DNA of 63,217 nt, filler included, from Octopus bimaculoides (taxonomy: Eukaryota), in NCBI RefSeq assembly GCF_001194135.2. It is 6 parts of 6 records of this genome, joined end to end, with 100 filler letters (N's around TTAATTAATTAA, not from the genome) between each part and the next. Parts side by side here need not be neighbours in the genome. Positions count along the whole stretch, not along the records: positions 13,219 to 37,278 come from NC_068990.1; 5 more parts are not named here. One strand, given 5' to 3'. Made by a program: the position numbers and the translations under genes. Shown here piece after piece: positions 11,095 to 37,378 of the stretch (positions are counted from its first letter, which is position 1; every line of letters begins with the position of its first letter). A model generated the notes under the pieces. That model saw only the letters and a program-made list of their open reading frames with translations. It ran no database searches and was not told where the DNA came from.

Positions 11095-12337
11095 ATAGGT
11101 TTGGTGATGGCAAACAGGAAAATAGAACTCAAAACACGAGTATGTGTATGTGTTTGTCCATGGTCGTGCTCCAGCATGACAGCAGCCACATGGCTGAAAT
11201 GAGTAAAAGAATAAAAAAATACACACATACACACACATACACACAAATTTTATCATTATAGTTATTATCATCATTTAATGTTCACTTTTCCATGCTGGCA
11301 TGGGTTGGATGATTTGACAGAATCTGATGAGTCGAAGCACTGAATGATGCTCCAATGTCTGCTTTTGTAGGGTTTCTTTATAGAATGTAACTAAATGCTC
11401 TTTGATGCAAAAAATTTTGCACGAAGCACATAGAAATTTCAAAATTTGTCATTTAAATAACGACATTAACACTACACCCTTTCAGCTATGAATAGCTACA
11501 AGACCCTGAGATGGAAAATTCTTGTCATATCTGCCACTACTGTACATAGAAAAAGCTCAATGGAAGGCCACAATGGATGAATACAGTTCCTGTATCTGGG
11601 ACAGAACTGCTGTTGCTACACAAACACAGACAACCTTGACCACATCCAGAGAAGGGCCACTCAACTGGTTGGCATTCAGTCTCCTACAGATACACTTCAG
11701 CCTCAAGCCCACAGGCACACTGTTTTCTCTCTCTCCTCTAATGGCCTCTGTTCCTCTGAGCTGGTTGGACACAGTCCTCTGCGGTTCAAGCCCTCCTATT
11801 CCATACATCTCTCCCTTTCTTATCACCCTTATTACAACCAACCCTCACCTCTCTTTCCTCACACTACACATTGTACTTAATCCTTCTTCCCCCTAAGCAT
11901 CATCCGTCTGGAATCTCCTCTTCTCTGCTCATGTTTTTCCGGCAGATGTTGAATTATGACAATTTAAAAAAGAACATTAACAACATCTACTGCACTGGTC
12001 TTGCGAGGGTCACACACACTGTCTCTTCCTCCAGACACAGCAAATAAAAAAAAACCCTCCACACCCCCATATGAAACCACACCCTAAAAAAGTCATCTCT
12101 CAACCAACCTGTACCTGTAACCCATAGAATATACCAGTTTATCACTTTTGCATTTAAGGTTAATTACACTGATGGACATCTCTACTTATTGCTGTGGAGT
12201 GGCTCTTATTTTAGTGACCCTAGAAAGATGAAATATAAAGCCAACCCCCACCAGAGTTTGAACTCAGAACCTAAGGAGGCACAATGATATACCAGACTTA
12301 TTTCCACATGATTTCCATGATTACAGCTGTTTTGTAT

Positions 12338-19931: not shown

Positions 19932-20793
19932 TGTGGTCTGATCAATAAGTATCCGGACTGTTACCATACTAACGAAGCTAAAGCACGCAGAATAAAGCCG
20001 CTTGGCAAAGATTGATCTTGAACTCTCTTTGCATGTGCACTAAATTTTAACGTTCTAGCTCACTTCCATTGTTTACAGCAGTGCTTGGAAGGAAGGTGTG
20101 TAGCATCTGTTTGTCGCATTGACCATGACAGAGAAAGCTGGGCAGAGAATCTGCATCAAATGTTGCCAAAATCTTGGTGATACCTGCTCAGAGACTTACG
20201 CAAAGTTTTCAAAAAGTTTTCATCGTTCTCGACACAATCAAGATCTTGTGCAACTGAAACCCGAGTGTCTTCTTGGTTAGCTGAAAGCAGTTTTGGCACA
20301 AACTTGGAAGACACGCGTCTCATACCCAAATCGTCAGTGATAATGAACTGAACTGTAACTAATCTGCACATCTTCTGATAACCCACGGATGATGCACGCA
20401 CATCTGCGATGTTTCTCTCAGTTCTTCTGGTTGCAGCTCTCCCCAAACGTTTGTCAATATCGACATTTTTCGGCCATCTTGGAAACTTCTGAACCACTCG
20501 TACACTTGTGTGCGAATCACACACACCTCTCCATGCATTTTCTGCAACTTTGCACATGCCTCTGAGCAGGTATCGCCATAAGAACTTTCTTTGTCATGGT
20601 CAATGCGATGATCATACGCTACACACATTCCTTATAAGCACTGCTATATATACAGGGGAAGTGAGCTAGAACGTTAAAACTTTGTGCGCATGCACAACAT
20701 AATTTAAGGTCAATCTGTGTCAAGCGGCTTCACTCTGCATGCATTAGCTTCGTTACTATGGCAACAGTCCAGATAATCATTGATCAAACCTCG
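19932..20793. mobile_element. Non-autonomous mariner derivative made of two inverted 5' halves
   Basis: TA-flanked TIRs (TGTGGTCTGATCAATAAGTATCCGGACTGT and rc CGAGGTTTGATCAATGATTATCTGGACTGT); transposase ATG on both strands (20125 +, 20597 -); HTH-type QVYEWFRSFQDGR and RRVSSKFVPKLL. Confidence 0.9.
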
Positions 20794-23490: not shown

Positions 23491-25084
23491 CGGGGTTCAG
23501 TTCATATAATTTCTCCACTTATTTCCACAATAGTTAATCATTTTACCTATGGTATGATTAATGTACCTACTTATTATTGGCACAACTCTACGCGAGGACA
23601 ATGTTTACAGGTTCCCTTTTACGGAACACTGTTAAACCCCATGTGACAGTCAATCACTACAACCTGCTCTCTACTACAAATTTTGGTTATGGCTTTGTTG
23701 ATTAGATATTTATAAACATGAGCCTATACAATATCCTGTCCCCCCAAGAGGCCAATAAAGCTTTTGTCACATCTTGTATCTTATGAAATAACTATGCTAT
23801 CAACTTATGACTCCCTATTAATTATGTTCACTAGAATGTTGGGATCATCTTACGTAATCTCTTGCTGCTGGCGTTCTTTGTTGTATGACACTAGTTTTTT
23901 TGCAGTGCTTGTCTCTCCATTTTTTCTACATTTTTTCCAGTTTTTATTGGACATATTTGTTTATATTGCTGATAGTATTTTATCGCTCACTTTTAGAGTT
24001 GTTTATTGTTTTATAACAAAGGTAAGCCGCTGGATTTAGTTAAAAACAAAAAACGACGAGCAATGGCTAGAAGAATATTGAGCTAAATCTAATGATCACC
24101 TGATCTAGCAGGCGGAGCCTCATTTCAGTGTGCAATGATTCCGTCGAGAGGTAGACCCTGAAACGGTACGCATGCTCTCCTGATGACTCCATAAACTTGC
24201 TGGCGTCCGGTATGCAGAGCTTTCAATTGGCAGCACTTGCATCTGCAAGGCAAGTTGTTTGTAAAACATCATCACTGATTTTTATGGTTATTTTCCATGA
24301 CATTTGCTATTTAATATTCCTCTATATTTTTCATGTCTTTCTAATATTTCTGTATTTCATAGAATTTATGATGGTCGAATTAGTTGCGCCTTTTATTGCT
24401 ACATTTAATTTATTGTTTAGTTTTATTCTTAAACTCTTGACGCCTCAGGAACGTCTCCTATTGTCTTTAATTCTTTAAATACTTCTATTTCTAGATTGAC
24501 AGCTTTATGAATACTGTCATTAAAATTTCTTATTCTTAAATCCTCTTCATATTTCCTGTTTTTTTATATATATATTTTCTTGCGTTGTTTCGGTCCAGGT
24601 TTTTGTTAGTCATTATGTTACATGTTGTTAAAGACTACGAGCTCGCAGAATCGTTGGCACGCAGGGTAAAATACTTAACGGCATTTCGTCCGTCCTTACA
24701 TTATGANNNNNNNNNNNNNNNNNNNNNNNNNNNNNNNNNNNNNNNNNNNNNNNNNNNNNNNNNNNNNNNNNNNNNNNNNNNNNNNNNNNNNNNNNNNNNN
24801 NNNNNNNNNNNNNNNNNNNNNNNNNNNNNNNNNNNNNNNNNNNNNNNNNNNNNNNNNNNNNNNNNNNNNNNNNNNNNNNNNNNNNNNNNNNNNNNNNNNN
24901 NNNNNNNNNNNNNNNNNNNNNNNNNNNNNNNNNNNNNNNNNNNNNNNNNNNNNNNNNNNNNNNNNNNNNNNNNNNNACAACGGATGTGTTTTTGAACGCT
25001 CCATATAAGTACTTCTCGAAAATTTGTTTTATACTCGTTGGTGCGTTATTTTTTCGGTTTACATTTTGTTCCAAGTTGTTAATA

Positions 25085-25980
25085 GAAACATGAAGAATCT
25101 GTCACTGGGCTTTTGTGTTTGCTTGGCACCTCGTGAGCAGGTCTATCCATAACAACCTCCACCTTATGCAATACATCATAGAGAGGACTGGGACCAAAGC
25201 TTGCATCGGGAGTGCTCTGATCAATTCGGATCAATCGAAAGCATTCGACAGGGTCGACCATCGCTACTTGAAAGCCGTCCTGAAAGCAGGCGATTTCGGA
25301 CACGTTTTCAAGGGGTGAAAACGAGTCCGAAATGCACAGTGGCACTTGTTCAGTGGTCAAAGTAAATGGTCATATATCGGAACCGTTTGACATCTAATGC
25401 TCGGTCCGTCAGGGCTGCCCGCTGTGGCCTCTTCTGTACGTATTGGCACTCGAGCCAGTGCTTCGAAAGTAGGAACAGCTAAGGGGGCATCCCTTTCGAA
25501 CTGGGACAAGGAAGGGCAGTGTCGGCACACGCGGACGACATCACCGTCATGGTGTCGGACGCCTCCGAAGTGGAGACAGTCGGCACCATCCTAAAGGAAT
25601 ATCAGTCAGTCGCAGGGGCCAAAATCAACGCCGACAAATTGGTGAGTTTGCGGTTGTGCTACTGGAAAGGCAGGACGATGCCATCAGACGGCGTCGTCGG
25701 ACGCTGGACAGATAGACCAGTTAAGCTGCTCGGAATCTGATTTGGTCCCGACCTCCAGGTTGATAAAAATTGGGACGTGGCGAACAGGGTGGCCTGTCTT
25801 ACCCAGAAATGGGCTGAGAAGAGCTGTTCCTGAAGGGTCGGGCATAGGTAGCGAATGCCTATATCGCCTCCGTTATCATTTATCGCCTGACAGTCGTGTT
25901 TTTTCCCTTTTACTACTTGGCCAGGTTGGAGCGTCTCTTATTTAAATTCTTGTGGAATGAACGCGTTCCAATGGTCAGAA
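25085..25980 (+). mobile_element. Tx1/L1-clade RT core fragment
   Basis: GRSIHNNLHL...DQSKAFDRVDHRYL...VRQGCPL...AHADDITVMV...GAKINADK; frameshifted. Confidence 0.9.
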
Positions 25981-25989
25981 AACTTGCAA

Positions 25990-27327
25990 AACGAATTGAT
26001 AAATGTCATTTGAAAGTTTTTTTTCAGTTTGTTTAAGAGAAACATTTTCATCTGTTGATTAGAACGCATTTTTTTCTTGGTGATCTTTGACAACTATATC
26101 CGGGCTATTGGACTTAATTTCTCTATCTGTGTGTATTGGCATAACCAAAAATATGGTTGCTTTCTCATATTCAGTGACCTTTTCTGGTTGTGCCTATATC
26201 ATCTTTTTTCTGTTGTTATTCCATAGTGTTGACTTAGATTCCAGTTTATATAGGTCCCAATTCTTAGCAAGGACTGGGCAGCCAGAGACAATATGATTTA
26301 TTGTTCCTTCTCCATCTCCGCATATTCTGCAGTACGTGTATTTCTTTTCATTACATGTTTTTGGTAATTTCTGGTGGGAAGGCTTTCATCTTGTGCCGCA
26401 ATTAAAAATCCTTCAGTCTCTGCTTTGAGTCCTGAGCTTCTGAGCCATAATTGTGATTTTGCATTGTCTATTTCTTTTCTGTTTAATATTTGCCATGAAA
26501 GGGCTTTCTTGTCAGTATCTGCTATGAAGGAGCTTTTCTTGCCAACCCTTTATCATGATCCGTTGCTGTTCCAGTTTTAGTTTGGATTTCAGTTGTGTTA
26601 CAGTTTTCGTTGTTTCTTCTTTTTCTTCATAGTTATTAGGTACTATGACTTCTTTTTTGTATTTGTCAGCTTCCTTAAAGACTGAAAACAGTTTTTTGTT
26701 TAGTTCGTGTTTTGTGGCTAGTTGTATTAGTTTTCCTTGCTTCTGAATCAGGTATTTTTGTAGTCCCATGGTGGTTATTTTGTAATAGTTTTCTAGCTGT
26801 ATAAGGCCTCTACTACCTTCGATAAGTTGTATGTCAGATTTTGGATGGTGCATCCTAAATCCTGTCATTATTTTTCTTGTTTTCCTGTCTATTTTGATTA
26901 GTTCATTTAATGTCCAGTTAAGAATATTGTAACTGTAACTTATAACTGGGACGGCTAGAGTGTTGATACCTATTATCTTGTTTTTCGCATTGAGCTCTGT
27001 TTTCAGTATTAATCTAACTCGTCTATAGTATTCTTTTCTTATCTTTTCTTTCATTTGTATGTGTTGTATCGTATTTAGTTAATTGATTCCTAAGTATTTG
27101 TATGCCTGGCTTTGGTCTAATTCTCTTATTTCATTTGCTTTATCTAGTGTGATGTTACTACTCTTAACTAGTTTTCCTCTTTCCGGGGTTACTTTGACAC
27201 ATATGTTTATTTCTACTGTCTGCAGTAATGTTTCCAGCTGTTTATCATTTGTAGCGTACAGTTTTAGATCACCCATATATAAGAGGTGGCTGATTGTTTT
27301 GCCGAAACAGTTGTATCCACATTCCAG
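25990..27327 (-). mobile_element. R4/Dong-like RLE retrotransposon fragment (RT C-terminus to endonuclease)
   Basis: ISHLLYMGDLKLY...YKYLGI...KEYYRRVRLILKTELNAKNKIIGINTLAVPV...PDIVVKD. Confidence 0.9.
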
Positions 27328-28082
27328 TTCTGTCATCTATTGTATTGTGTTTGCTAAAATTACGCGTGAAGGTTTGACTATTTTTGCTAATCCTAGCTAT
27401 TTCATCTGCTATTTCCTTTAATCGTGATTCACTGTAACCGCGTCTGACATATACAAAAACATTTCCATGTTTCCAGTAATCCCCTATGTCAGTACAAATC
27501 CGTTTTATCCTAAAAAGTTGGGATTTCAGATTTGACCGAATAATATAATATGGATGATCGGAGCGGCGGTAGATATAAATGTGGGATGACGTGGGCTTGC
27601 AAAATAACTCTGTCACTATTCTGCCTCCAGAAAACTTAACTTTTATCTCCAAAATTTCAACTTTAGTTTTTGAAAAACTAGACGTAAATTTTATGTTGGA
27701 CTTAAAGCCATAGTTTTTAGCATAACAGTCACTGAAATGCAAGAAGTTCATTAAACTATCCTGCGATCCTTCTCAGACAAAAAATACGTCATCATTGAAC
27801 CGTAACCAGAGTATTGGTTCAAGACCATGAAGGGATTTGAATGTCTGCAGTAAGTGTGTCTCGAAATTCGTCATAAAGACATTGGCGAAATTAACTCCCA
27901 TGAGGTTATCCATGACGCAACCTTTTGTCTGGTGGTAAAATCGTAATCTAAACTTCATTGTGTTACTTTGTAACACAAGATTCATTAATCTAAAGAGAAA
28001 ATTTGATGGAATACTTTTATTTGACTGCTTTTCGAAGGCATCCATGCATGCTTCTACCCCTTCATCATGGTCAATATTGTTT
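27328..28082 (-). mobile_element. Penelope-like RT fragment (inverted arm)
   Basis: IDHDEGVEAC...FYHQTKGCVM..MGVNFANVFM...WLRFNDDVFF...LFCKPTSSH. Confidence 0.9.
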
Positions 28083-28089
28083 TCCTCCA

Positions 28090-29520
28090 TTAATAAGGTG
28101 GAATGTAGGATTTTACGGTCAGAAAGAAGAACACCTGTATTTTAGAGTCTCCCTAAAAATACATAAAAAATTTGAAAGATTTCCTCCTACGCACTCAATT
28201 TGCAGCGGAAATGAATGTTTGTACGGCCAAGATTTCAGAATAGCTGGATGGCTTTCTACTCCCTGTTGCAAAAGATCAGGTTCCTATATCGGGATACTTT
28301 GATTTTGTGTCTAAAATCAACAACTTTTTTAAGCAACATGTCGAGAACTGTTTTTTGGTAACCATGGATGTTTCTTCCTCATATCCCAATACTGACCATG
28401 ATGAAGGGGTAGAAGCATGCATGGATGCCTTCGAAAAGCGATCAAGCAAAAGTATTCCATCAAATTTTCTCTGTAGATTATTGAAGCATGTGTTACAAAG
28501 TAACACAATGAAGTTTAGACAACGATTTTACCAAACCATCATACATAATTTTTGCAAACACAATACAATAGCTGACAGAATTCCCTTAGTGATTAACTGG
28601 CACCGACATTTCGCTGGCATTTCAAAAGTGTTGCATGAAAGTTACCAGCGTGAGGCGAAAAAATATCCTCGTTTCAAACATATTTCCTCAGTCGCTTATT
28701 GTAGCCTTTAGACGGAATAAGAATATAAGAGAATTATTGACCTCTATTTCTGACTCCAAGAAAACGAACATTGGAGTATCTGCACGCTGTACCTTTTAAG
28801 GTACAGCGTAAGAGAAGTAAGCCCTGTTCATTGTGCAACAACATGACTAAAGTGAATTCCATCAGAAATCATAACAGAAATGTTAAGATTTATACAGAAG
28901 GTGGAATCTGTAAAGATTCCCATTTGGTGTACGCTGTAGAATGCACGAAACACAACTTGTCGGTTGTACGACAGAACAATTAAACAAAAGGTTTAATGGG
29001 CACAGATTCGAAATCAGGCACAAAAACAGTAGTTCGACAGAACTTGCCGAACATTTCGTTTCCAGCAGCTGCAGTTCTGAAGAAGTGCATATTCTCAGAA
29101 AATATTTTGAAACTGCTTCACTTTCACTTCTCAGAGGTATGAGGAGAAATATGCTTGCGGGTTATTAACACCACGCCCTGGAAGAATGAATAAGATGACA
29201 GGAGAATATCATCAAATTTATACAAAACTGTTTGTTTAAATATTCTTCTTTTTCTCTTTTTTCTTTCCTTTTTTCCTGTCGTCTTCTTTTTTTTGTTTTT
29301 TTTCTGTCTTTTTCTTTCAGCCTGTTATAAAATTGAAACTTAAAAACTTATGATGTCATTCCATCAACGTGTGGATGCTGGTTGTTCTCGTTCATACATT
29401 ACGTTTAAATTTCTATAATTTTGAATTTTTTTCACTTATTCTGAACTTGACAAAGACTGACTTACTGTTTAAATATCATTCAACCAATAAAATATCTATT
29501 ACAATCGAATCGCGCTCTTC
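28090..29520 (+). mobile_element. Penelope-like (Neptune-type) element with internal deletion: RT N-part, GIY-YIG and 3' terminal repeat
   Basis: RTPVF.SLPKIHK, FLVTMDVSSSYPN, PCSLC, HLVYAVECTKH..VGCTTEQLNKRFNGHR. Confidence 0.9.
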
Positions 29521-29532
29521 GTCTTAACTATT

Positions 29533-29570
<38 letters not shown>

Positions 29571-31208: not shown

Positions 31209-34200
31209 GAGGTAAGATGTGTTTTTCAGAGCTCCGTCAGTTTAAAATTTGTTGTTAATTTTCAAATTTATTGACTGTTTGTTTTTGGTTTTTGTTTTCC
31301 GAACCCATTTTGGTGTACAGGAGTTCTTTTGTTAAACATTTCGGACTTTTTGTCTATTTAAAAAAAATTTCGCTTTCTCGGTTGACGAAAATAGCAAGAT
31401 AGCTTCTTTTGTCGAAGGGAGTGGCAGTAGCTGTTCTGACGGCCAGTACAGTCAAGACTCCCCCCTTTAAACAGCACAATCACAAGCAGTGATGTCAGCA
31501 GCACCACCATCAGTAACAAAGAGAATCTGGCAAGCCAAGAAATTGTTCCAGAAAAAGAGAAGGAGGAAGAAAGAACAACAAAAAAAATAATGACACTGAC
31601 ACCACAAACACGAACAGCATATCTAGCGGCAACGGTTTCGCCTCGGCAGCATACCAGACAAAAGAGTTGATGAATTTAACAAAAAATGAACTACAAATTG
31701 CAAAGAAGTTGTTAAGGAAGGAAGGAAACAACGTCTTCCTTAACACACCTCAGGAGACGGATCGAAAAGCGCTTCGGTACAGTGGAAGTGCATTTTGCTA
31801 CAGAGAAGGAAGCAAGACAGCATTCCACTGTCCCCCTAAAAACAGAAGAATTCCTGCTCGTGTCGACATACCTTGATCGGCGCGTGACGAAAATTAAAAT
31901 TGGAGATGTGTCCCCCGAAATAAATCTATGCTGGCTGGTGGCAGCTGTCCTCTATGATATAGAGAACACCGCCAATATACTGGAGGTGCATAAATTGCGT
32001 CAACAAAATTGGACGGGTCAGGGATCAGAGCTTCTTGTTCACATTTAACAACAAGTCATAAATTCTATCCATGACACCATAAATCTACCAGACGACCGTG
32101 GTGACAACCAACACCTCAAGGTCAACTGCCCCAAATACAAAGAAAAAAAAAAAAAAGTTGCAAGCATCAAGAGAAACAAGGGCACCTCCAGTGCAGCAGC
32201 AGAAAACAACCCCATCACTACCAGCAACAGCGGCGCTGCCTCCAACAGTCGCTAGCGCACCACGAAAACCGGACGGTGTACCACCACCAGCCGGAATGTC
32301 ACCGCAAGCCGAAGTGGTACAGCTGATCGGAGAGCCATCGTCATCAACAACATAGACTTCGTGAATACCACAGGGAAGACTTTGTCTTTCTAACACACAA
32401 TGCACCATCACCACACATAGAGATTTTAAAAAATACAACAGGAAACATTCAATGCTTTGAAAATAAACTTTCCAAATGCTGCTGGCTCCTTTCAAAACAT
32501 TTTCTTCAAAAGGTAAGTTGGTGCTCCTAGATGTGAACAGTAATGACGGCGGTGCTTTCAGACTGGTGGCTGCTTATGCTCCGACAAGGGGCAGGGCGAT
32601 CTGATTACTTCAAGCGTCTAGAGGTTTTCCTGGAAACATCTCGGACTTTAGTATTAGTAAGGGATTGGAGCGCTGTCTTAGATGGACGTTAGATGGACGT
32701 TTCGATTGCTTGATAGAAGAGGTGGGTGCAAAAGCCACAAAAACCTGCTCACACTTTTTCAGTTGTGTGACAGGTACCGATTAGATTACACGAATGTGCC
32801 AATGTGGACTTGGACAAACCGCATCGGGTCATCTAGATCGTATCTAGATAGGGGATTTTGTAGGCCAGCGGACAAGGATAGCATAGGGTGTCCACAATTT
32901 CACATGATCGGCTACAAAGACCACAAATTTGTGATCTGAACGGTCGACTGAGATAGGCCTAATAGGGTCCCGGTTACTGGAAGCTGAACGCGTCGTTACT
33001 GGCATGTCAAGCTTACAGAGATCAGGTTAGGGAATTAGTTAAGCGGGCGTTACGGGTGCAATCGTCAACAACAACTGGTGGATTGATCATAAAAGGGCAA
33101 TTAGAGTAGAATCGATCAGAGCAGAGAGAAATAGAATAGAGGGTGATTTAGTTAGGAAGTTAGATGAGGCACTTAGGTAAGGCATCGCAATTGAAGTGTT
33201 GGCGGCGAGATTAGCCCTTGACCAATCTTTCAACGCCAGACACGAAGGCTGCGTTGTCAGAGCTAGGCACGCTCACTAAGCGGGGAGGGAACGTAAGCAT
33301 CAGGATGGGCCCGCGTGGCAGAAGCGTAAAGTGGCAATAAGCCGCCATTTGGTCTTTGGTGGACCAGAACGGATGCGTTGTGTTCGAGCCGAAACAGATG
33401 TGTGCAGCTTTTCAGCGGCACTTTGCTCGACTGCCCGAGACGAATGGTGGTGTAGATAACATAGCAGACTTCAGTCTCTACCTAGTCGGCCTGCCACCAC
33501 TCTCGACGAGCGGAGTGCTGCGAAAGGCCGATAACAGCCGCCGAAATACAGGAAGCGATGAAGAGTTGCCCGAGAGAAGAACTGGGATGAGGTGTTGAGC
33601 AGGATAGCCAATCTCACCCAGAAATGGGCCGAGAGAAAGCTGTCCATGAAAGGTTCAGCGGAGGTGTCAAATGCGTACATGGCATCTGTCATCTATTTCC
33701 GCTTGACTGTCGTCCCTTGTCCTGTTTGCTGCTTGACCAAGCTGGTGTGCTTACTCTTCCGCTTTTTGTGGAAGGGGCGCGTTCCACTGGTCAGGCGCTC
33801 CATCTGTTGTCAACAGCCACTGAATGGATGGCTGGACATGCCATGGTTATTGATGCGCGGACATGCGCTGAGGTTGCGGTATCTCCAGCGATTCCTTGAC
33901 GGTGAGCATATGTGGTCACCGTTTGTAATACACGCTTTTCCACAGCTCGTCTCTTTAATGAGTTGCAATCCTGGATTAGGCGTAGACCGAGGAGGGGCGC
34001 TTGGCACCTCAAATGCCATGAAGCGCTCACAGCCCCCCTGCCAGGCGGGTAATGCGGTCGGTTCTACTCTAGCGTTATATAAAGGACTAGTGAAGGGAAA
34101 GTGCGACGGCATTCTCGAGGAAACTCTGGGCGTCGATGAAGATCAACTAACCGGTCTGTTTCGGAGAACTTTCGGGCCTGGGCCTATGGACAACTTCCAG

Positions 34201-34920
34201 AAATCACTTGCCTGGCAGTGATATCGAGGGACGCTGCCTGTTCGAGATAAACTTTACAGGCATGGAAGTGCCGTCAGCCGAGGTGCGCCCAAAACGATGA
34301 AACCGTTCTGCATGCCCTAGTCCAGTGCCCGAGTATTGCTGACCTGTAAGTTTGTGTCGAACACCTGCTGTCGCGTGTAGGACGAATCCGGCTATCAGCT
34401 GAATCCATTGCGAAGATGCCTCGCTGCCCTCTTTTGACCGGGAGGGGAANNNNNNNNNNNNNNNNNNNNNNNNNNNNNNNNNNNNNNNNNNNNNNNNNNN
34501 NNNNNNNNNNNNNNNNNNNNNNNNNNNNNNNNNNNNNNNNNNNNNNNNNNNNNNNNNNNNNNNNNNNNNNNNNNNNNNNNNNNNNNNNNNNNNNNNNNNN
34601 NNNNNNNNNNNNNNNNNNNNNNNNNNNNNNNNNNNNNNNNNNNNNNNNNNNNNNNNNNNNNNNNNNNNNNNNNNNNNNNNNNNNNNNNNNNNNNNNNNNN
34701 NNNNNNNNNNNNNNNNNNNNNNNNNNNNNNNNNNNNNNNNNNNNNNNNNNNNNNNNNTAACTTAAAGCGTCTCCCCGCTGGAAGTTTAAATTGTTTAATT
34801 TTAATTGTTATTATATACTTTACACGTTTTAAAACCCATTGTATCGTGTTGTTTTTGTCCTTTATGTTGTTGTATGCCGCTTAATGTAATTTTATGTCAG
34901 CCCTTGTGGCCAATAAACGA
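31209..34920 (+). mobile_element. Near full-span Tx1/L1-clade LINE remnant (ORF1, APE endonuclease, RT core deleted, C-terminus, polyA signal)
   Basis: RLVAAYAP, WTWTNRIGSSRSYLDR, LLFRFLWKGRVPLVRRSICCQ, TLPVRDKLYRH; AATAAA at 34912 followed by (ATT)n; 5' boundary approximate. Confidence 0.85.
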
Positions 34921-34989: not shown

Positions 34990-35900
34990 ATCTTCTTTCA
35001 ATTCTGTATCCATTTCTTGCGGAGTGTCTTCCTGAAACCTAGGGCAAAAAACCGTACTTTATACATTGGTAGGCCATTAAAACAAACACATCAGATTGTT
35101 CATTTACAGAGCCATGTGATAGAGAAAAAGGGGAAGACAGAGGGAAAAAGGAAAAAATTAAAAATAAGAAAAGTAAACAAATACAATAAAGGGGGAAAAG
35201 GAACGAAAATTCAAAGCGACAATTCTCTTCTCAATACATGTGACGTACCAGTTAAGACAATCTTTTGCACCTCCTGCATGGATGTTAAGCCAGGCATCAT
35301 TCTTAAATAATTTTCAGTTCCATTTTGATCATTGCAAGTGCTCCTACAATCACTGGTATTGTAACCGTTTTGAGGTACCACATTTTTTCGATTTCGATTA
35401 GCAAATTTTCTGGGCTTATCAAAATCTTTTGCCGAGATATTATGGCCCATGTCAATCAATAAACAGACTTTATTGCTTTTGTCTTTCACAACAATACCTG
35501 GTTTATTAGCTTTGATGGTTCGGTCTATATATACTGGAAGATCGCAAAGAATAGTTTCATTTTTTTCCCTCAGTTACATCCAGAGGGGTACTTGTACAAT
35601 TTGTCAGCAGTTTTGATTTTATAATGCCAACACATTATCCAAATTAGATATTGGCCAACTCTCTCGTGTCTTGATTTGTACTCTACAGGATCTAAAACCT
35701 TACATCCAGCGATTAGGTGGTCGACTGGTTCTCTCCCATCGTTGCAGTATCGGCACTTTGGGTCTACACCATTTTTCATTACATTGGCTTGATAGTTCCG
35801 GGTCAATAAGCTCTGATCTTGGGCAGCCAAGGTGAAGCCTTCACTCTCTGCCTTTAAGCCAGAGCTCCGTAGTAACTGATGGATGTGCATCAGGTCGAGT
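34990..35900 (-). mobile_element. R4/Dong-like RLE retrotransposon 3' fragment
   Basis: LKAESEGFTLAAQDQSL.TRNY...KCRYC....PVDHLIAGC...RHERVGQYL; KVCLLID. Confidence 0.9.
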
Positions 35901-36565
35901 AGCCCATCCCGCTCAAATGGACGCTGAATAAGGGTTGTTGAAGGATGCTGAATGAAGCACCCATGTTTCCAGAGGTAAATTATTCCAGAGGTGAATTGGA
36001 GAACAGCCGCAAGAGAGGTAAGCCCTGTTCATTATGCAACAAGTGTCAAGTGAATTCCATCAGGAATCATAGCAGAAATGTTATGATTTATACAGAAGGT
36101 TGGACATGTAAAGATTCCCATTTGGTGTACGCAGCACAATGCACAAAACACAAATTGAATTATGTTGGTTGTACAACAGAATAATTAAACAAAAGGCTTA
36201 ATGGGCACAGATTCAACGTCAGGCACAATAACAGTAGTTCGACAGAACTTGCTGAACATTTCGTTTCAAACGGCTGCACTTCTGCTTCACTTTCACTTCT
36301 CAGAATGCATGAGGAGAAATATGTTTGTGGGTTATTAACATCACACCCTGGAGAAATGAATAAGATGACAGGAGAATATCATCAAAATTTATACAAAACT
36401 GAAGTATATTTGCCACTTAAATGCGGCTAGACCTAAGGGTGAATGCTACTGTTGCTTTTAGCCCCAGGAGAACCTCTCCTCCAGCTGATTATTGACACAC
36501 TTTCTGTGCCCTGTTGGTATTTGCAAAGGGAAGTCATTCTTCCCATCGTCGATCTCACGTGATAC

Positions 36566-36608
36566 GCACGGACTCGAGTTTCTGGGTATTTACCCTTCGT
36601 CAGCGTAC
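36566..36608 (-). ncRNA. Type-I hammerhead-like motif
   Basis: GTACG-CTGACGA-A-GGGT(aaat)ACCC-A-GAA-ACTCGAGT-C-CGTGC. Confidence 0.65.
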
Positions 36609-36646
36609 GACAATCACCGATCTTCGATGCGAAGGGCTCCCTTGTC

Positions 36647-36689
36647 GTACGCTGACGAAGGGTAAATACCCAGAAACTCGAGTCCATGC
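36647..36689 (+). ncRNA. Type-I hammerhead-like motif, inverted twin with one stem I mismatch
   Basis: GTACG-CTGACGA-A-GGGT(aaat)ACCC-A-GAA-ACTCGAGT-C-CATGC. Confidence 0.55.
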
Positions 36690-37378
36690 GTATCACGTCA
36701 GATCGACGATGGGAAGGATGACTTCCCTTTGCAAATACCGACAGGGCACAGAAAGTGTGTCAATAGCCAGCTGGAGGGGATGTTCTCCTGGGGCTAAAAG
36801 CAACAGTAGCATTTACCCTTAGGTTCTAGTCGCATTTAAGTGGCAAATATACTTCACATTGTCGTGCAGTTACTGTTTATACCTCGTTCAAAGATTTAAC
36901 ATTGTTTATACATAACTGTTTGATTAAATATTCTTTTTCCTTTTCTTTTTTCATTTTTCTCTCTCTTATTTTCTGTCTTTTCATTTTGCCAGTTATAAAA
37001 TTGAAACTTAAAGACTGATATTATCATTCCATCAACGTGAGGACGCTAGTTGCTCTCATTCATATTTTATATTTGAATTTCTATAATTTTGAATTTTTAT
37101 CACTTTTTATTTTGAACTGGACAAAGACGGGCTTGCTGTCGAAATATCGTTCAACCAATAAAATATCTATTGCAATCGCATTGCGCTCTTCATCTTATCT
37201 GTTTACATTTGTGAAGAGTTAGGTCAGTCCTTTTAAAGTCTTCTTCTTCTTCTTCTTCTTCTTCTTCTTCTTCTTCTTNNNNNNNNNNNNNNNNNNNNNN
37301 NNNNNNNNNNNNNNNNNNNNNNTTAATTAATTAANNNNNNNNNNNNNNNNNNNNNNNNNNNNNNNNNNNNNNNNNNNN

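What the first reader, a model, noticed from the sequence alone, without database searches (positions are those of the whole stretch)
36388..36918. TSD-flanked fold-back insertion carrying a hammerhead ribozyme on each strand
Seen: a 503-bp insertion into a Penelope 3' region. It is bounded by a 14-bp TSD with 1 mismatch, and the sister copy at ~29218 has the uninterrupted single site. The insertion consists of ~212-bp inverted arms (about 10 substitutions and 2 indels by eye), a 28-nt loop and a 50-nt tail. Each arm contains GTACG-CTGACGA-A-GGGT(aaat)ACCC-A-GAA-ACTCGAGT-C-C(G/A)TGC. Known: type-I minimal hammerheads with palindromic stem III are typical of Penelope-like elements and act as dimers. 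Inference: the long TSD and asymmetric tail suggest TPRT with fold-back or template switching rather than a MITE. As an intronic RNA it would be a long dsRNA (ADAR or siRNA substrate) that masks its own ribozyme. The extra A before GAAA is non-canonical.
Basis: partly seen in the sequence, partly recalled or inferred. Interest (0 to 1): 0.85.

Follow-up and report, generated by a model that had tools for sequence, protein, structure and literature searches.

The report
Head-to-head Penelope-type retroelement stub with hammerheads
The 503-bp palindromic insertion is real, but it matches the already documented layout of truncated Penelope-like retrotransposon insertions (two inverted end-pieces, each with a minimal hammerhead motif, and a short tail on one side), so it is an ordinary dead transposon fragment and not a new kind of element.

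Summary
A 503-bp insert (36402-36904) lies between a 14-bp target-site duplication with 1 mismatch. The site is single and uninterrupted in the sister copy (29217-29230) and in an Octopus sinensis copy of the same host element. The arms are 214 and 215 nt and 94.9% identical, with a 28-nt spacer and a 48-nt tail on the right side only. Each arm carries the same type-I minimal hammerhead motif, on opposite strands. None of this is unusual for Penelope-like elements (PLEs). Published descriptions already cover an inverted 5'-truncated copy or inverted pseudo-LTR abutting the direct one. They also cover a 30-40-bp tail at one end only, short target duplications (8-10 bp in the examples read), AT-rich targets at another PLE's ORF/pLTR junction, and minimal hammerheads 100-700 bp apart on opposite strands. 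A purified PLE protein cuts and extends both DNA strands in vitro from two nearby start sites, which would give this geometry directly. The hammerhead scores below Rfam's threshold and has an extra A on each side of helix II. The plus-strand copy also has a C.A mismatch in helix I. In a transcript of this locus the motif would be buried in a 214-bp duplex. I found no other copy of the arm, so descent from an RT-encoding PLE is inferred, not shown.

The parts
36003..36401 (+). Host element, left part: C-terminal GIY-YIG endonuclease region of an older, decayed Penelope-like element. It ends at the ORF/3'-UTR junction, where the insert sits.
   Evidence: 80% identical to sister copy 28803-29230 and 81% to O. 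sinensis L001 12098-12513. Pfam GIY-YIG E=6.7e-4, 20.3 bits, just below the cut-off of 22.6. The sister copy carries RT motifs and the GIY-YIG region in one orientation.
36388..36401 (.). Left copy of the target-site duplication, TTTATACAAAACTG. The last two bases (TG) could equally belong to the arm (2-nt microhomology).
   Evidence: The site is single-copy in the sister copy (29217-29230) and in L001 (12500-12513).
36400..36613 (-). Left arm: a copy of the hammerhead-bearing unit in antisense orientation on the + strand. It lacks the tail.
36565..36609 (-). Minimal type-I hammerhead motif, the better copy. Helix I is 6 bp (CGUACG/CGUGCG), the core is CUGACGA..GAAA, helix II is GGGU/ACCC with loop AAAU and an A on each side, and helix III is the palindrome ACUCGAGU. 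The predicted cut is after GUC, between 36571 and 36570 on the minus strand.
   Evidence: Rfam RF00163 19.6 bits, full model 1-45, below the gathering score of 34. It passes the strict descriptor.
36614..36641 (.). 28-nt spacer between the arms. It contains a mini-palindrome, CTTCG-ATG-CGAAG (36622-36634), centred on the axis of the large palindrome. Non-complementary patches of 8 nt and 7 nt flank it.
36642..36856 (+). Right arm: the same unit in sense orientation.
36646..36690 (+). Second copy of the hammerhead motif, with a C.A mismatch at the second pair of helix I (CAUGCG in place of CGUGCG, a CpG-to-CpA type change). The predicted cut is after C36684.
   Evidence: Rfam RF00163 15.7 bits at 36647-36693. 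It passes the descriptor only with helix I relaxed.
36857..36904 (+). 48-nt one-sided 'tail' continuing the sense copy up to the right duplication. It has no counterpart on the left arm. CATTG occurs at both of its ends (36857-36861 and 36900-36904).
   Evidence: It corresponds to the optional 30-40-bp PLE tail (PMC3846280, PMC8557442, PMC11167929).
36905..36918 (.). Right copy of the target-site duplication, TTTATACATAACTG (1 mismatch).
36905..37203 (+). Host element, right part: the 3' untranslated region of the older PLE copy.
   Evidence: 79% identical to 29217-29532 and 84% to L001 12500-12763.

Best explanation
The insert is a dead-on-arrival retro-insertion made by the machinery of a Penelope-like element. 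It consists of two head-to-head, severely 5'-truncated copies of the hammerhead-bearing terminal (pseudo-LTR-type) region of a PLE or of a PLE-dependent non-autonomous element.

Proposed mechanism. The element's GIY-YIG endonuclease nicked both strands of an AT-rich site 14 nt apart, at the ORF/3'-UTR junction of an older, unrelated PLE copy. The bottom-strand 3'-OH primed reverse transcription from the distal start site (the end of the tail, 36904), giving the sense copy. The top-strand 3'-OH primed a second synthesis from a start site 48 nt upstream (the arm end, 36400/36402), giving the antisense copy without a tail. The two growing strands were joined near 36614-36641, and fill-in produced the 14-bp duplication.

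Shown: the anatomy, the single-event duplication, two empty sites, the hammerhead motif, and the absence of terminal inverted repeats at the true ends.

Inferred: PLE parentage of the arms, priming on both strands, and two start sites.

The locus has no evident present function. In any transcript through it the hammerhead would be locked in a 214-bp duplex against its own antisense copy.
For: Anatomy and single-event duplication. Two independent empty sites.

The target is AT-rich (11 of 14) and lies a few codons before the host PLE's stop codon.

The motif has the PLE-specific traits of a nucleotide between A9 and G10.1, a loopless palindromic helix III and a short helix I (PMC4209133). Two copies co-fold into the dimeric double hammerhead as the minimum-energy structure.

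Literature. In PMC3846280 the typical Penelope structure has an adjacent inverted pLTR, and a 31-bp tail is optionally present on one of the inverted pLTRs. The pLTRs are 181-218 bp and the duplications 8-10 bp. [quoted passage not shown] PMC4209133 reports dual minimal hammerheads 100-700 bp apart on opposite strands in Schistosoma mansoni.

The same window holds a second PLE head-to-head pair: a minus-strand RT piece at 27825-28079 abuts the plus-strand copy that starts at 28090.
Against: No other copy of the arm was found, so no link to an RT/GIY-YIG ORF is shown. The arms have no significant similarity to the host PLE's 3' region.

The tail is 48 nt, longer than the usual 30-40. The 14-bp duplication is longer than the 8-10 bp seen in the rotifer examples.

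The 8/7-nt non-complementary patch beside the central mini-palindrome is not predicted by any simple model.

The hammerhead is below Rfam's threshold and has an unreported extra A between C11.1 and G12.
Confidence: 0.7

Rival explanations
1. The same PLE-type retro-insertion, but the palindrome arose from one cDNA. The first-strand cDNA, primed at 36904, snapped back on itself or switched template at the short palindrome CTTCG-ATG-CGAAG and copied itself. The top-strand end then joined by TG microhomology.
For: A mini-palindrome sits exactly on the axis of symmetry. There is a 2-nt TG microhomology at the left junction. PMC3846280 infers self-priming from palindromes at inverted PLE junctions.
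Against: Self-copying should make everything outside the priming hairpin perfectly complementary. The 8/7-nt non-complementary patch next to it is therefore unexplained. Nothing in this model explains why the copy stops exactly 48 nt short of the other end, whereas two start sites do (PMC11167929).
Confidence: 0.3
2. The arms derive not from an autonomous PLE but from a short non-autonomous hammerhead element (an animal 'non-LTR retrozyme' or solo-pLTR-type SINE) mobilised in trans by PLE proteins.
For: The unit has no open reading frame running through it in any frame. A protein search with its ORF found nothing. A 2026 preprint (10.64898/2026.07.22.740005) argues that animal retrozymes are pLTR-derived non-autonomous PLE sequences. 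PMC3846280 shows that pLTRs alone suffice for trans-mobilisation.
Against: Retrozymes are described as head-to-tail tandems (PMC7229834), and this insert is inverted. A 291-nt 5'-truncated stub of an autonomous PLE would look identical.
Confidence: 0.25
3. A full-length PLE with the layout inverted pLTR - pLTR - ORF - pLTR+tail was inserted here. It later lost its ORF by recombination between the two direct pLTRs, leaving an inverted pLTR plus a solo pLTR with its tail.
For: The arm length (214 nt) equals typical full pLTR lengths of 181-218 bp (PMC3846280). The duplication would be preserved by such a deletion.
Against: There is no trace of internal sequence. PLE insertions are known to be very often 5'-truncated (PMC8557442), which is the simpler route.
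Confidence: 0.1
4. A MITE or foldback-type DNA transposon that happens to carry a hammerhead-like string.
For: Long inverted arms and a flanking duplication.
Against: The real ends of the insert are not inverted repeats, because of the 48-nt one-sided tail. By my recollection of DNA-transposon superfamilies, not looked up here, a 14-bp duplication is longer than any of them makes. The arms carry a full PLE-type hammerhead, which did not occur in 500 shuffles.
Confidence: 0.04
5. An assembly artefact, meaning a chimeric fold-back read or a collapsed inverted repeat.
For: The scaffold contains N gaps, and PLE inverted structures are known to trouble assemblies (PMC8557442).
Against: The arms differ at 11 positions. 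The insert is flanked by a duplication of a site that is single in two other copies, and it has an asymmetric tail. An artefact would give identical arms and no duplication.
Confidence: 0.02

Closest known systems
Typical Penelope-like element insertion with an inverted pLTR and a one-sided tail (for example Pen2a_Av of Adineta vaga; Penelope of Drosophila virilis)
   Same: A head-to-head inverted copy abuts the direct copy. The repeats are about 200 bp. An optional 30-40-bp tail sits on one of the inverted repeats only. There is a short target-site duplication, a nested insertion into another retroelement, a palindrome at the inverted junction, and a hammerhead in the repeat (PMC3846280, PMC8557442, PMC4209133).
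   Different: No ORF and no second direct pLTR lie between the repeats, so only the two terminal pieces are present. The tail is 48 nt and the duplication 14 bp. Parentage from an RT-encoding element is not demonstrated.
PLE minimal type-I hammerhead (min-HHR; Cervera and De la Pena 2014; Rfam RF00163)
   Same: The CUGANGA/GAAA/UH core, a nucleotide between A9 and G10.1, a G-C pair closing helix II, a loopless palindromic helix III that forces dimer formation, a short helix I, and occasional pairs on opposite strands.
   Different: There is an additional A between C11.1 and G12, so helix II is separated from the core by an A.A juxtaposition. Helix II is only 4 bp, against 6-8 bp in many PLE hammerheads. 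The Rfam score is below threshold.
In vitro mobilisation of the Anolis PLE PAc (PMC11167929)
   Same: An AT-rich target at a PLE ORF/pLTR junction, cleavage and extension of both strands, and two reverse-transcription start sites whose spacing equals the tail. Together these predict an inverted pair with a one-sided tail.
   Different: PAc starts 111-118 nt into its ORF, about 90 nt after the hammerhead cut. Here the ends lie 172 and 220 nt after the predicted cut, and no ORF start is visible.
Animal non-LTR retrozymes (PMC7229834; preprint 10.64898/2026.07.22.740005)
   Same: A short non-coding unit with a type-I hammerhead, a duplication longer than 4 bp, and a link to PLE pLTRs.
   Different: Retrozymes are head-to-tail tandems that yield circular RNAs. 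This is a single inverted pair that cannot form the tandem dimer in cis.
LINE-1 5' inversions by twin priming
   Same: A 5' part is inverted relative to the 3' part within one duplication-flanked TPRT insertion, and the second target strand is used as a primer.
   Different: By my recollection of the L1 twin-priming model, not looked up here, the inverted segment comes from RNA upstream of the direct segment, with little overlap. Here the two segments cover the same 214 nt.

Membership tests
Penelope-like element (EN+ PLE) insertion | Single ORF encoding RT plus GIY-YIG endonuclease inside the element | tested here: not met
   The insert has no ORF with such domains. All three sense frames contain stops, and a protein search with its longest ORF found nothing. 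This is expected for a 5'-truncated or solo-pLTR stub, so it does not exclude PLE origin.
Penelope-like element (EN+ PLE) insertion | Head-to-head inverted 5'-truncated copy or inverted pLTR adjacent to the direct copy | tested here: met
   Arms 36400-36613 and 36642-36856, 94.9% identical, 28-nt spacer.
Penelope-like element (EN+ PLE) insertion | Optional 30-40-bp tail present at one end only | tested here: met
   A 48-nt extension at 36857-36904 on the sense copy only. It is somewhat longer than the published range.
Penelope-like element (EN+ PLE) insertion | Target-site duplication at an AT-rich target | tested here: met
   A 14-bp duplication, 11 of 14 A/T, with the empty site seen twice.
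Penelope-like element (EN+ PLE) insertion | Hammerhead motif within the terminal repeat | tested here: met
Penelope-like element (EN+ PLE) insertion | Sequence homology of the repeat to the pLTR of an RT-encoding family member | not testable with these tools
   No searchable cephalopod genome was available. There was no match in the window, in L001, in two metagenome scans or in the host PLE 3' regions.
Hammerhead ribozyme, type I (Rfam RF00163) | Conserved core C3-A9, G12-A14, A15.1-U16.1 and H17 | tested here: met
   CUGACGA ... GAAAC ... GUC aligned to the full model 1-45 in both arms.
Hammerhead ribozyme, type I (Rfam RF00163) | Score at or above Rfam's gathering threshold (34 bits) | tested here: not met
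   19.6 and 15.7 bits. Helix II was left unaligned as a 14-nt insertion. No hammerhead hit at E<=1 over the whole piece.
Hammerhead ribozyme, type I (Rfam RF00163) | G10.1-C11.1 pair stacked directly on the core | tested here: inconclusive
   A G-C pair closes helix II, but an A lies on each side of it. The A between 9 and 10.1 is a known PLE trait. The A between 11.1 and 12 is not described in the papers read (PMC4209133, PMC3088659).
Hammerhead ribozyme, type I (Rfam RF00163) | Helix I able to form | tested here: met
   6 bp in the minus-strand copy. The plus-strand copy has a C.A mismatch at the second pair.
Hammerhead ribozyme, type I (Rfam RF00163) | Self-cleavage | not testable with these tools
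   Only folding was possible. The monomer's minimum-energy fold is not the hammerhead, and two copies co-fold into the dimeric form at -31.3 kcal/mol. Published PLE minimal hammerheads cleave poorly in vitro (PMC4209133).
MITE / foldback DNA transposon | Terminal inverted repeats at the very ends of the insertion | tested here: not met
   The left end is TGAAGTATAT. The right end is ...TTTAACATTG (reverse complement CAATGTTAAA). The inverted repeat stops 48 nt before the right end.
MITE / foldback DNA transposon | Fixed, short, superfamily-specific target-site duplication | not testable with these tools
   Only one copy is available. By my recollection, not looked up here, its 14-bp duplication is longer than those of known DNA-transposon superfamilies.
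Animal non-LTR retrozyme | Head-to-tail tandem repeats, each with a type-I hammerhead | tested here: not met
   The two units are inverted, not tandem. There is no further copy in the piece.
L1-type twin-priming inversion | Inverted and direct segments derive from adjacent, essentially non-overlapping parts of the RNA | tested here: not met
   The segments overlap completely over 214 nt.

The most novel reading that the evidence does not exclude
The insert may be an unusually clean natural fossil of symmetric, both-strand target-primed reverse transcription by a dimeric PLE ribonucleoprotein. In that reading both nicks fall 5' of TTTG, 14 nt apart, and the two cDNAs started at two sites 48 nt apart, each next to a CATTG. 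It would be in vivo support for the both-strand and two-start-site behaviour so far seen only in vitro for one lizard PLE. In addition, its hammerhead, with an A.A juxtaposition between helix II and the core, may be a still-functional, undescribed core variant of a cephalopod PLE family.
Probability: 0.25. Interest if true: 0.4.

Novelty: new member of a known kind. Interest (0 to 1): 0.2.

Why it matters
The main result is a correction. A palindrome with a ribozyme motif on each strand looks exotic when read cold, but it is the standard footprint of Penelope-like element integration and should be annotated as a truncated PLE or pLTR insertion.

It has modest value in three ways. First, it is a compact, duplication-flanked example with two empty-site controls, and it fits the recently proposed both-strand, two-start-site integration model. 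Second, it points to an uncharacterised hammerhead-bearing PLE or retrozyme family in an octopus-like genome, whose hammerhead has an extra A on both sides of helix II. Third, such 200-bp perfect-duplex hairpins are candidate dsRNA sources in an animal lineage known for heavy RNA editing, but only if they are transcribed, which was not tested.

Tried and rejected
1. Rfam over the whole piece gave no hammerhead at E<=1. The strong MIR399, MIR781 and mir-734 hits are generic responses to a long hairpin, on both strands and below their thresholds, so I rejected them.

2. I searched for other copies of the arm. Self-BLAST of the piece and BLAST against O. sinensis locus L001 found none. Two metagenome scans with strict and relaxed hammerhead patterns gave 0 hits. 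A protein-database search with the 102-aa ORF spanning the hairpin found no candidate.

3. I looked for octopus DNA through transposon proteins. An RT fragment gave one O. sinensis gene model, and its locus L001 supplied the second empty site. A LINE ORF gave only hits at about 50-60% identity from unrelated ENA assemblies. Two of those loci were fetched. The one that could be compared, L002, showed only about 70% transposon-level similarity and no arm match.

4. I tried to identify the window's own record by exact ORF look-up. Nothing was on record.

5. I tested whether the tail is homologous to the host PLE's 3' region. Similarity was marginal with one copy (z=3.55) and absent with the other two, so I treated it as chance.

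6. I looked for a hammerhead in the host PLE's own 3' region and found none.

7. I looked for an ORF start in the arm, as in PAc or A. vaga pLTRs. No frame stays open through the arm end and tail.

8. I asked whether the differences between arms show an ADAR-like A/G excess in the sense strand. By my own tally from the list, 5 of the 8 transitions are A/G in the sense orientation. That is too few to mean anything.

9. Pyatkov et al. 2004 (Penelope endonuclease) could not be retrieved.
Full report
WHAT IS THERE. The region reads as the first-stage reader described. The repeat finder reports inverted arms at 36431-36613/36642-36824 (183 nt, 95%) and 36400-36431/36825-36856 (32 nt, 97%), separated by a single-base indel. 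BLAST joins them into one 457-nt self-complementary match. A global alignment gives arms of 214 nt (36400-36613) and 215 nt (36642-36856). They share 204 of 215 columns (94.9%), with 10 substitutions (8 transitions) and one 1-nt indel. A 28-nt spacer lies between them (36614-36641). To the right of the right arm lie 48 nt (36857-36904) with no counterpart on the left. The insert is 46.9% G+C, against 39% and 29% for its flanks.

ONE INSERTION EVENT. The flanks belong to a decayed Penelope-like element (PLE). Positions 36003-36401 align to 28803-29230 of a sister copy (80%), and 36905-37203 align to 29217-29532 (79%). The two alignments overlap by exactly 29217-29230. That 14-mer, TTTATACAAAACTG, is single in the sister copy. 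It is duplicated around the insert at 36388-36401 and at 36905-36918, the latter with one mismatch.

An RT fragment of the host element matched an Octopus sinensis gene model at 80% identity. The locus fetched for it (L001, CM016878.1) holds a third copy of the host element, 81-85% identical. There the 14-mer is again single and identical (L001 12500-12513), and both flanks align. So there are two independent empty sites. Because the duplication encloses the whole palindrome, the palindrome formed during integration and not by later rearrangement of a monomer. The 11 differences between the arms and the presence of the duplication also rule out a fold-back assembly artefact.

THE HOST. The sister copy carries RT motifs and, in the same orientation, a CxxC region followed by a GIY-YIG-like region. 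The host fragment next to the insert hits Pfam GIY-YIG at E=6.7e-4, just under the cut-off. The insertion site lies a few codons before the host ORF's stop codon, at the ORF/3'-UTR junction, in AT-rich sequence.

THE HAMMERHEAD MOTIF. CTGACGAAGGGTAAATACCCAGAAACTCGAGTC occurs at 36652-36684 (+) and 36603-36571 (-), and nowhere else in the piece. Rfam's type-I hammerhead model (RF00163) aligns end to end to both. Its consensus is aUccagCUGAcGA..GAAACGcgCGUCcuggAu, against the window's CGUACGCUGACGA..GAAACUCGAGUCCGUGCG. The scores are only 19.6 bits (minus strand) and 15.7 bits (plus strand) against a gathering score of 34, because helix II is skipped as a 14-nt insertion. Over the whole piece no hammerhead reaches E<=1.

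I wrote a structural descriptor that requires the core, helix II of at least 4 bp, a palindromic helix III and helix I of at least 4 bp. It finds the minus-strand copy, with helix I of 6 bp, and nothing in 500 block shuffles of the piece. The plus-strand copy passes only when helix I is relaxed, because CGUGCG has become CAUGCG. That is a CpG-to-CpA type change, and it puts a C.A mismatch at the second pair next to the cleavage site. So the motif is real and not a chance string.

Helix II reads A-GGGU(AAAU)ACCC-A. A nucleotide between A9 and G10.1 and a G10.1-C11.1 pair are listed as consistent traits of metazoan PLE hammerheads, as is a palindromic, loopless helix III that forces dimer action (PMC4209133). 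The second A, between C11.1 and G12, is not described in the papers I read. Its effect on catalysis is unknown.

In silico the isolated 45-mer does not prefer the hammerhead fold (-11.5 against -7.7 kcal/mol). Two copies co-fold into the dimeric double hammerhead with an 8-bp intermolecular helix III as the minimum-energy structure (-31.3 kcal/mol). A transcript of the whole insert folds into a 214-bp duplex (-411.6 kcal/mol) that buries the motif.

WHAT IT IS. Every feature that made the finding look exotic is part of the published description of PLE insertions.

- Arkhipova et al. 2013 (PMC3846280) describe the 'typical Penelope structure' as pLTR-ORF-pLTR with 'an adjacent inverted pLTR'. 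The whole is flanked by a short duplication (8-10 bp). [quoted passage not shown] The pLTRs are 181-218 bp, and palindromes occur at the inverted junction.
- Craig et al. 2021 (PMC8557442) state that insertions are highly 5'-truncated. [quoted passage not shown] The insert here equals that typical structure reduced to its two terminal pieces: an inverted piece without a tail, and a direct piece with one. The same window contains a second PLE head-to-head pair. A minus-strand RT piece (27825-28079, continuing leftwards) abuts the plus-strand sister copy that starts at 28090. Measured against the contiguous O. sinensis copy, one partner extends about 300 nt further 5' than the other. This is the same topology as the hairpin, whose spacer can be read as a 28-nt longer 5' end of one partner.

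HOW IT WAS PROBABLY MADE. The geometry fits priming on both nicked strands. The bottom-strand end (...GTATAAA-3') is followed by the complement of the tail, so it primed the sense copy from position 36904. The top-strand end (...AAAACTG-3') is followed directly by antisense sequence, so it primed synthesis on a sense template from the arm end. Both inferred nicks precede TTTG and are 14 nt apart. There is a 2-nt TG ambiguity at the left junction.

The Anolis PLE protein PAc cleaves and extends both strands of its target in vitro. It prefers AT-rich DNA just downstream of a PLE ORF-pLTR junction. It starts reverse transcription at two internal sites whose spacing corresponds to the genomic tail (PMC11167929). 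An inverted pair with a tail on one side only is what that behaviour predicts.

It is supported by the mini-palindrome CTTCG-ATG-CGAAG (36622-36634) on the symmetry axis. It does not explain the 8/7-nt non-complementary patch beside that palindrome, or why the copy stops exactly 48 nt short. I rate PLE-machinery origin at about 0.7. Within it, both-strand priming is somewhat more likely than snap-back. A later solo-pLTR-type deletion of a full-length element cannot be excluded. A MITE is unlikely because the true ends of the insert are not inverted repeats. By my recollection, not looked up here, 14 bp also exceeds DNA-transposon duplications.

WHAT IS NOT SHOWN. I could not find any other copy of the arm. 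No cephalopod genome can be searched with these tools. So I could not test whether the parent is an autonomous PLE or a pLTR-derived non-autonomous element (an animal 'retrozyme'; PMC7229834 and preprint 10.64898/2026.07.22.740005). I also could not test whether family termini cluster at the two proposed start sites, or whether the double-A hammerhead is conserved.

The arms are not detectably related to the host PLE's own 3' region, and that region has no hammerhead. No ORF runs through the unit. Intronic location, transcription, editing and small RNAs are untested. The arms' 5% divergence and the one mismatch in the duplication indicate an old, neutrally decaying insertion.

VERDICT. The object is a new example of a well-described kind, not a new kind. 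Interest is low (0.2). Its modest value is as a clean natural specimen consistent with both-strand, two-start-site PLE integration, and as a pointer to an undescribed hammerhead-bearing PLE or retrozyme family in an octopus-like genome.

Noticed in passing
window 27825-28079 (-) and 28090-29532 (+): The sister host-PLE copy is itself a head-to-head pair. A minus-strand RT-coding piece, which continues left to about 27270 with motifs FYHQTKG...FNDD, abuts the 5' end of the plus-strand copy. The inverted overlap is 27933-28079 with 28387-28533 (147 nt, 93%).
   Followed up: partly
window 29533 onward, window about 37251 onward, L001 12799 onward: Three copies of the host PLE family each end in or near a different trinucleotide microsatellite: (ATC)n directly after the copy's end at 29533, (TTG)n directly after the copy's end in L001, and (CTT)n about 47 nt past the end of similarity in the window's second copy. 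This may reflect the microsatellite insertion bias reported for some PLE clades, or simply the repeat-rich genome.
   Followed up: no
window 29231-29540; L001 12480-12820: The host PLE family (C-terminal GIY-YIG) shows no recognisable hammerhead in the roughly 300 nt after its stop codon. This is noteworthy because canonical hammerheads are said to be general in EN+ PLEs with a C-terminal endonuclease.
   Followed up: partly
window 28533-28739 versus minus-strand copy 27270-27933: The plus-strand sister copy jumps from RT motif '...RFYQ' to the post-RT linker ('NFCKHNTIADR...'), so it lacks the RT core that the minus-strand copy retains. The O. sinensis copy (L001 about 11921-12032) has a similar but not identical internal gap. 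This suggests internally deleted PLE derivatives.
   Followed up: no
window 19935-20137 and 20585-20790: Another inverted repeat (206 nt, 82.5%) with about 450 bp between the arms and a 133-aa ORF on the minus strand between them. It has no hammerhead pattern. It may be a DNA transposon or another inverted retroelement pair.
   Followed up: no
window 24900-26200 (+), 32700-34700 (+), 26000-27250 (-), 35570-35890 (-): The surrounding sequence is a patchwork of LINE fragments (RT with YADD-type motifs, and an RTE/jockey-like C-terminal region with a CxxC...H motif), abundant microsatellites and N gaps. The neighbourhood is transposon-dense, and no host gene is evident.
   Followed up: partly
window 36857-36904 and the target 36388-36401: The tail contains TGTTTATAC (36874-36882), and the same 9-mer is recreated at the tail/duplication junction (36902-36910). 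CATTG also brackets the tail. This could hint at a target or template sequence preference, or it could be chance in AT-rich DNA.
   Followed up: no
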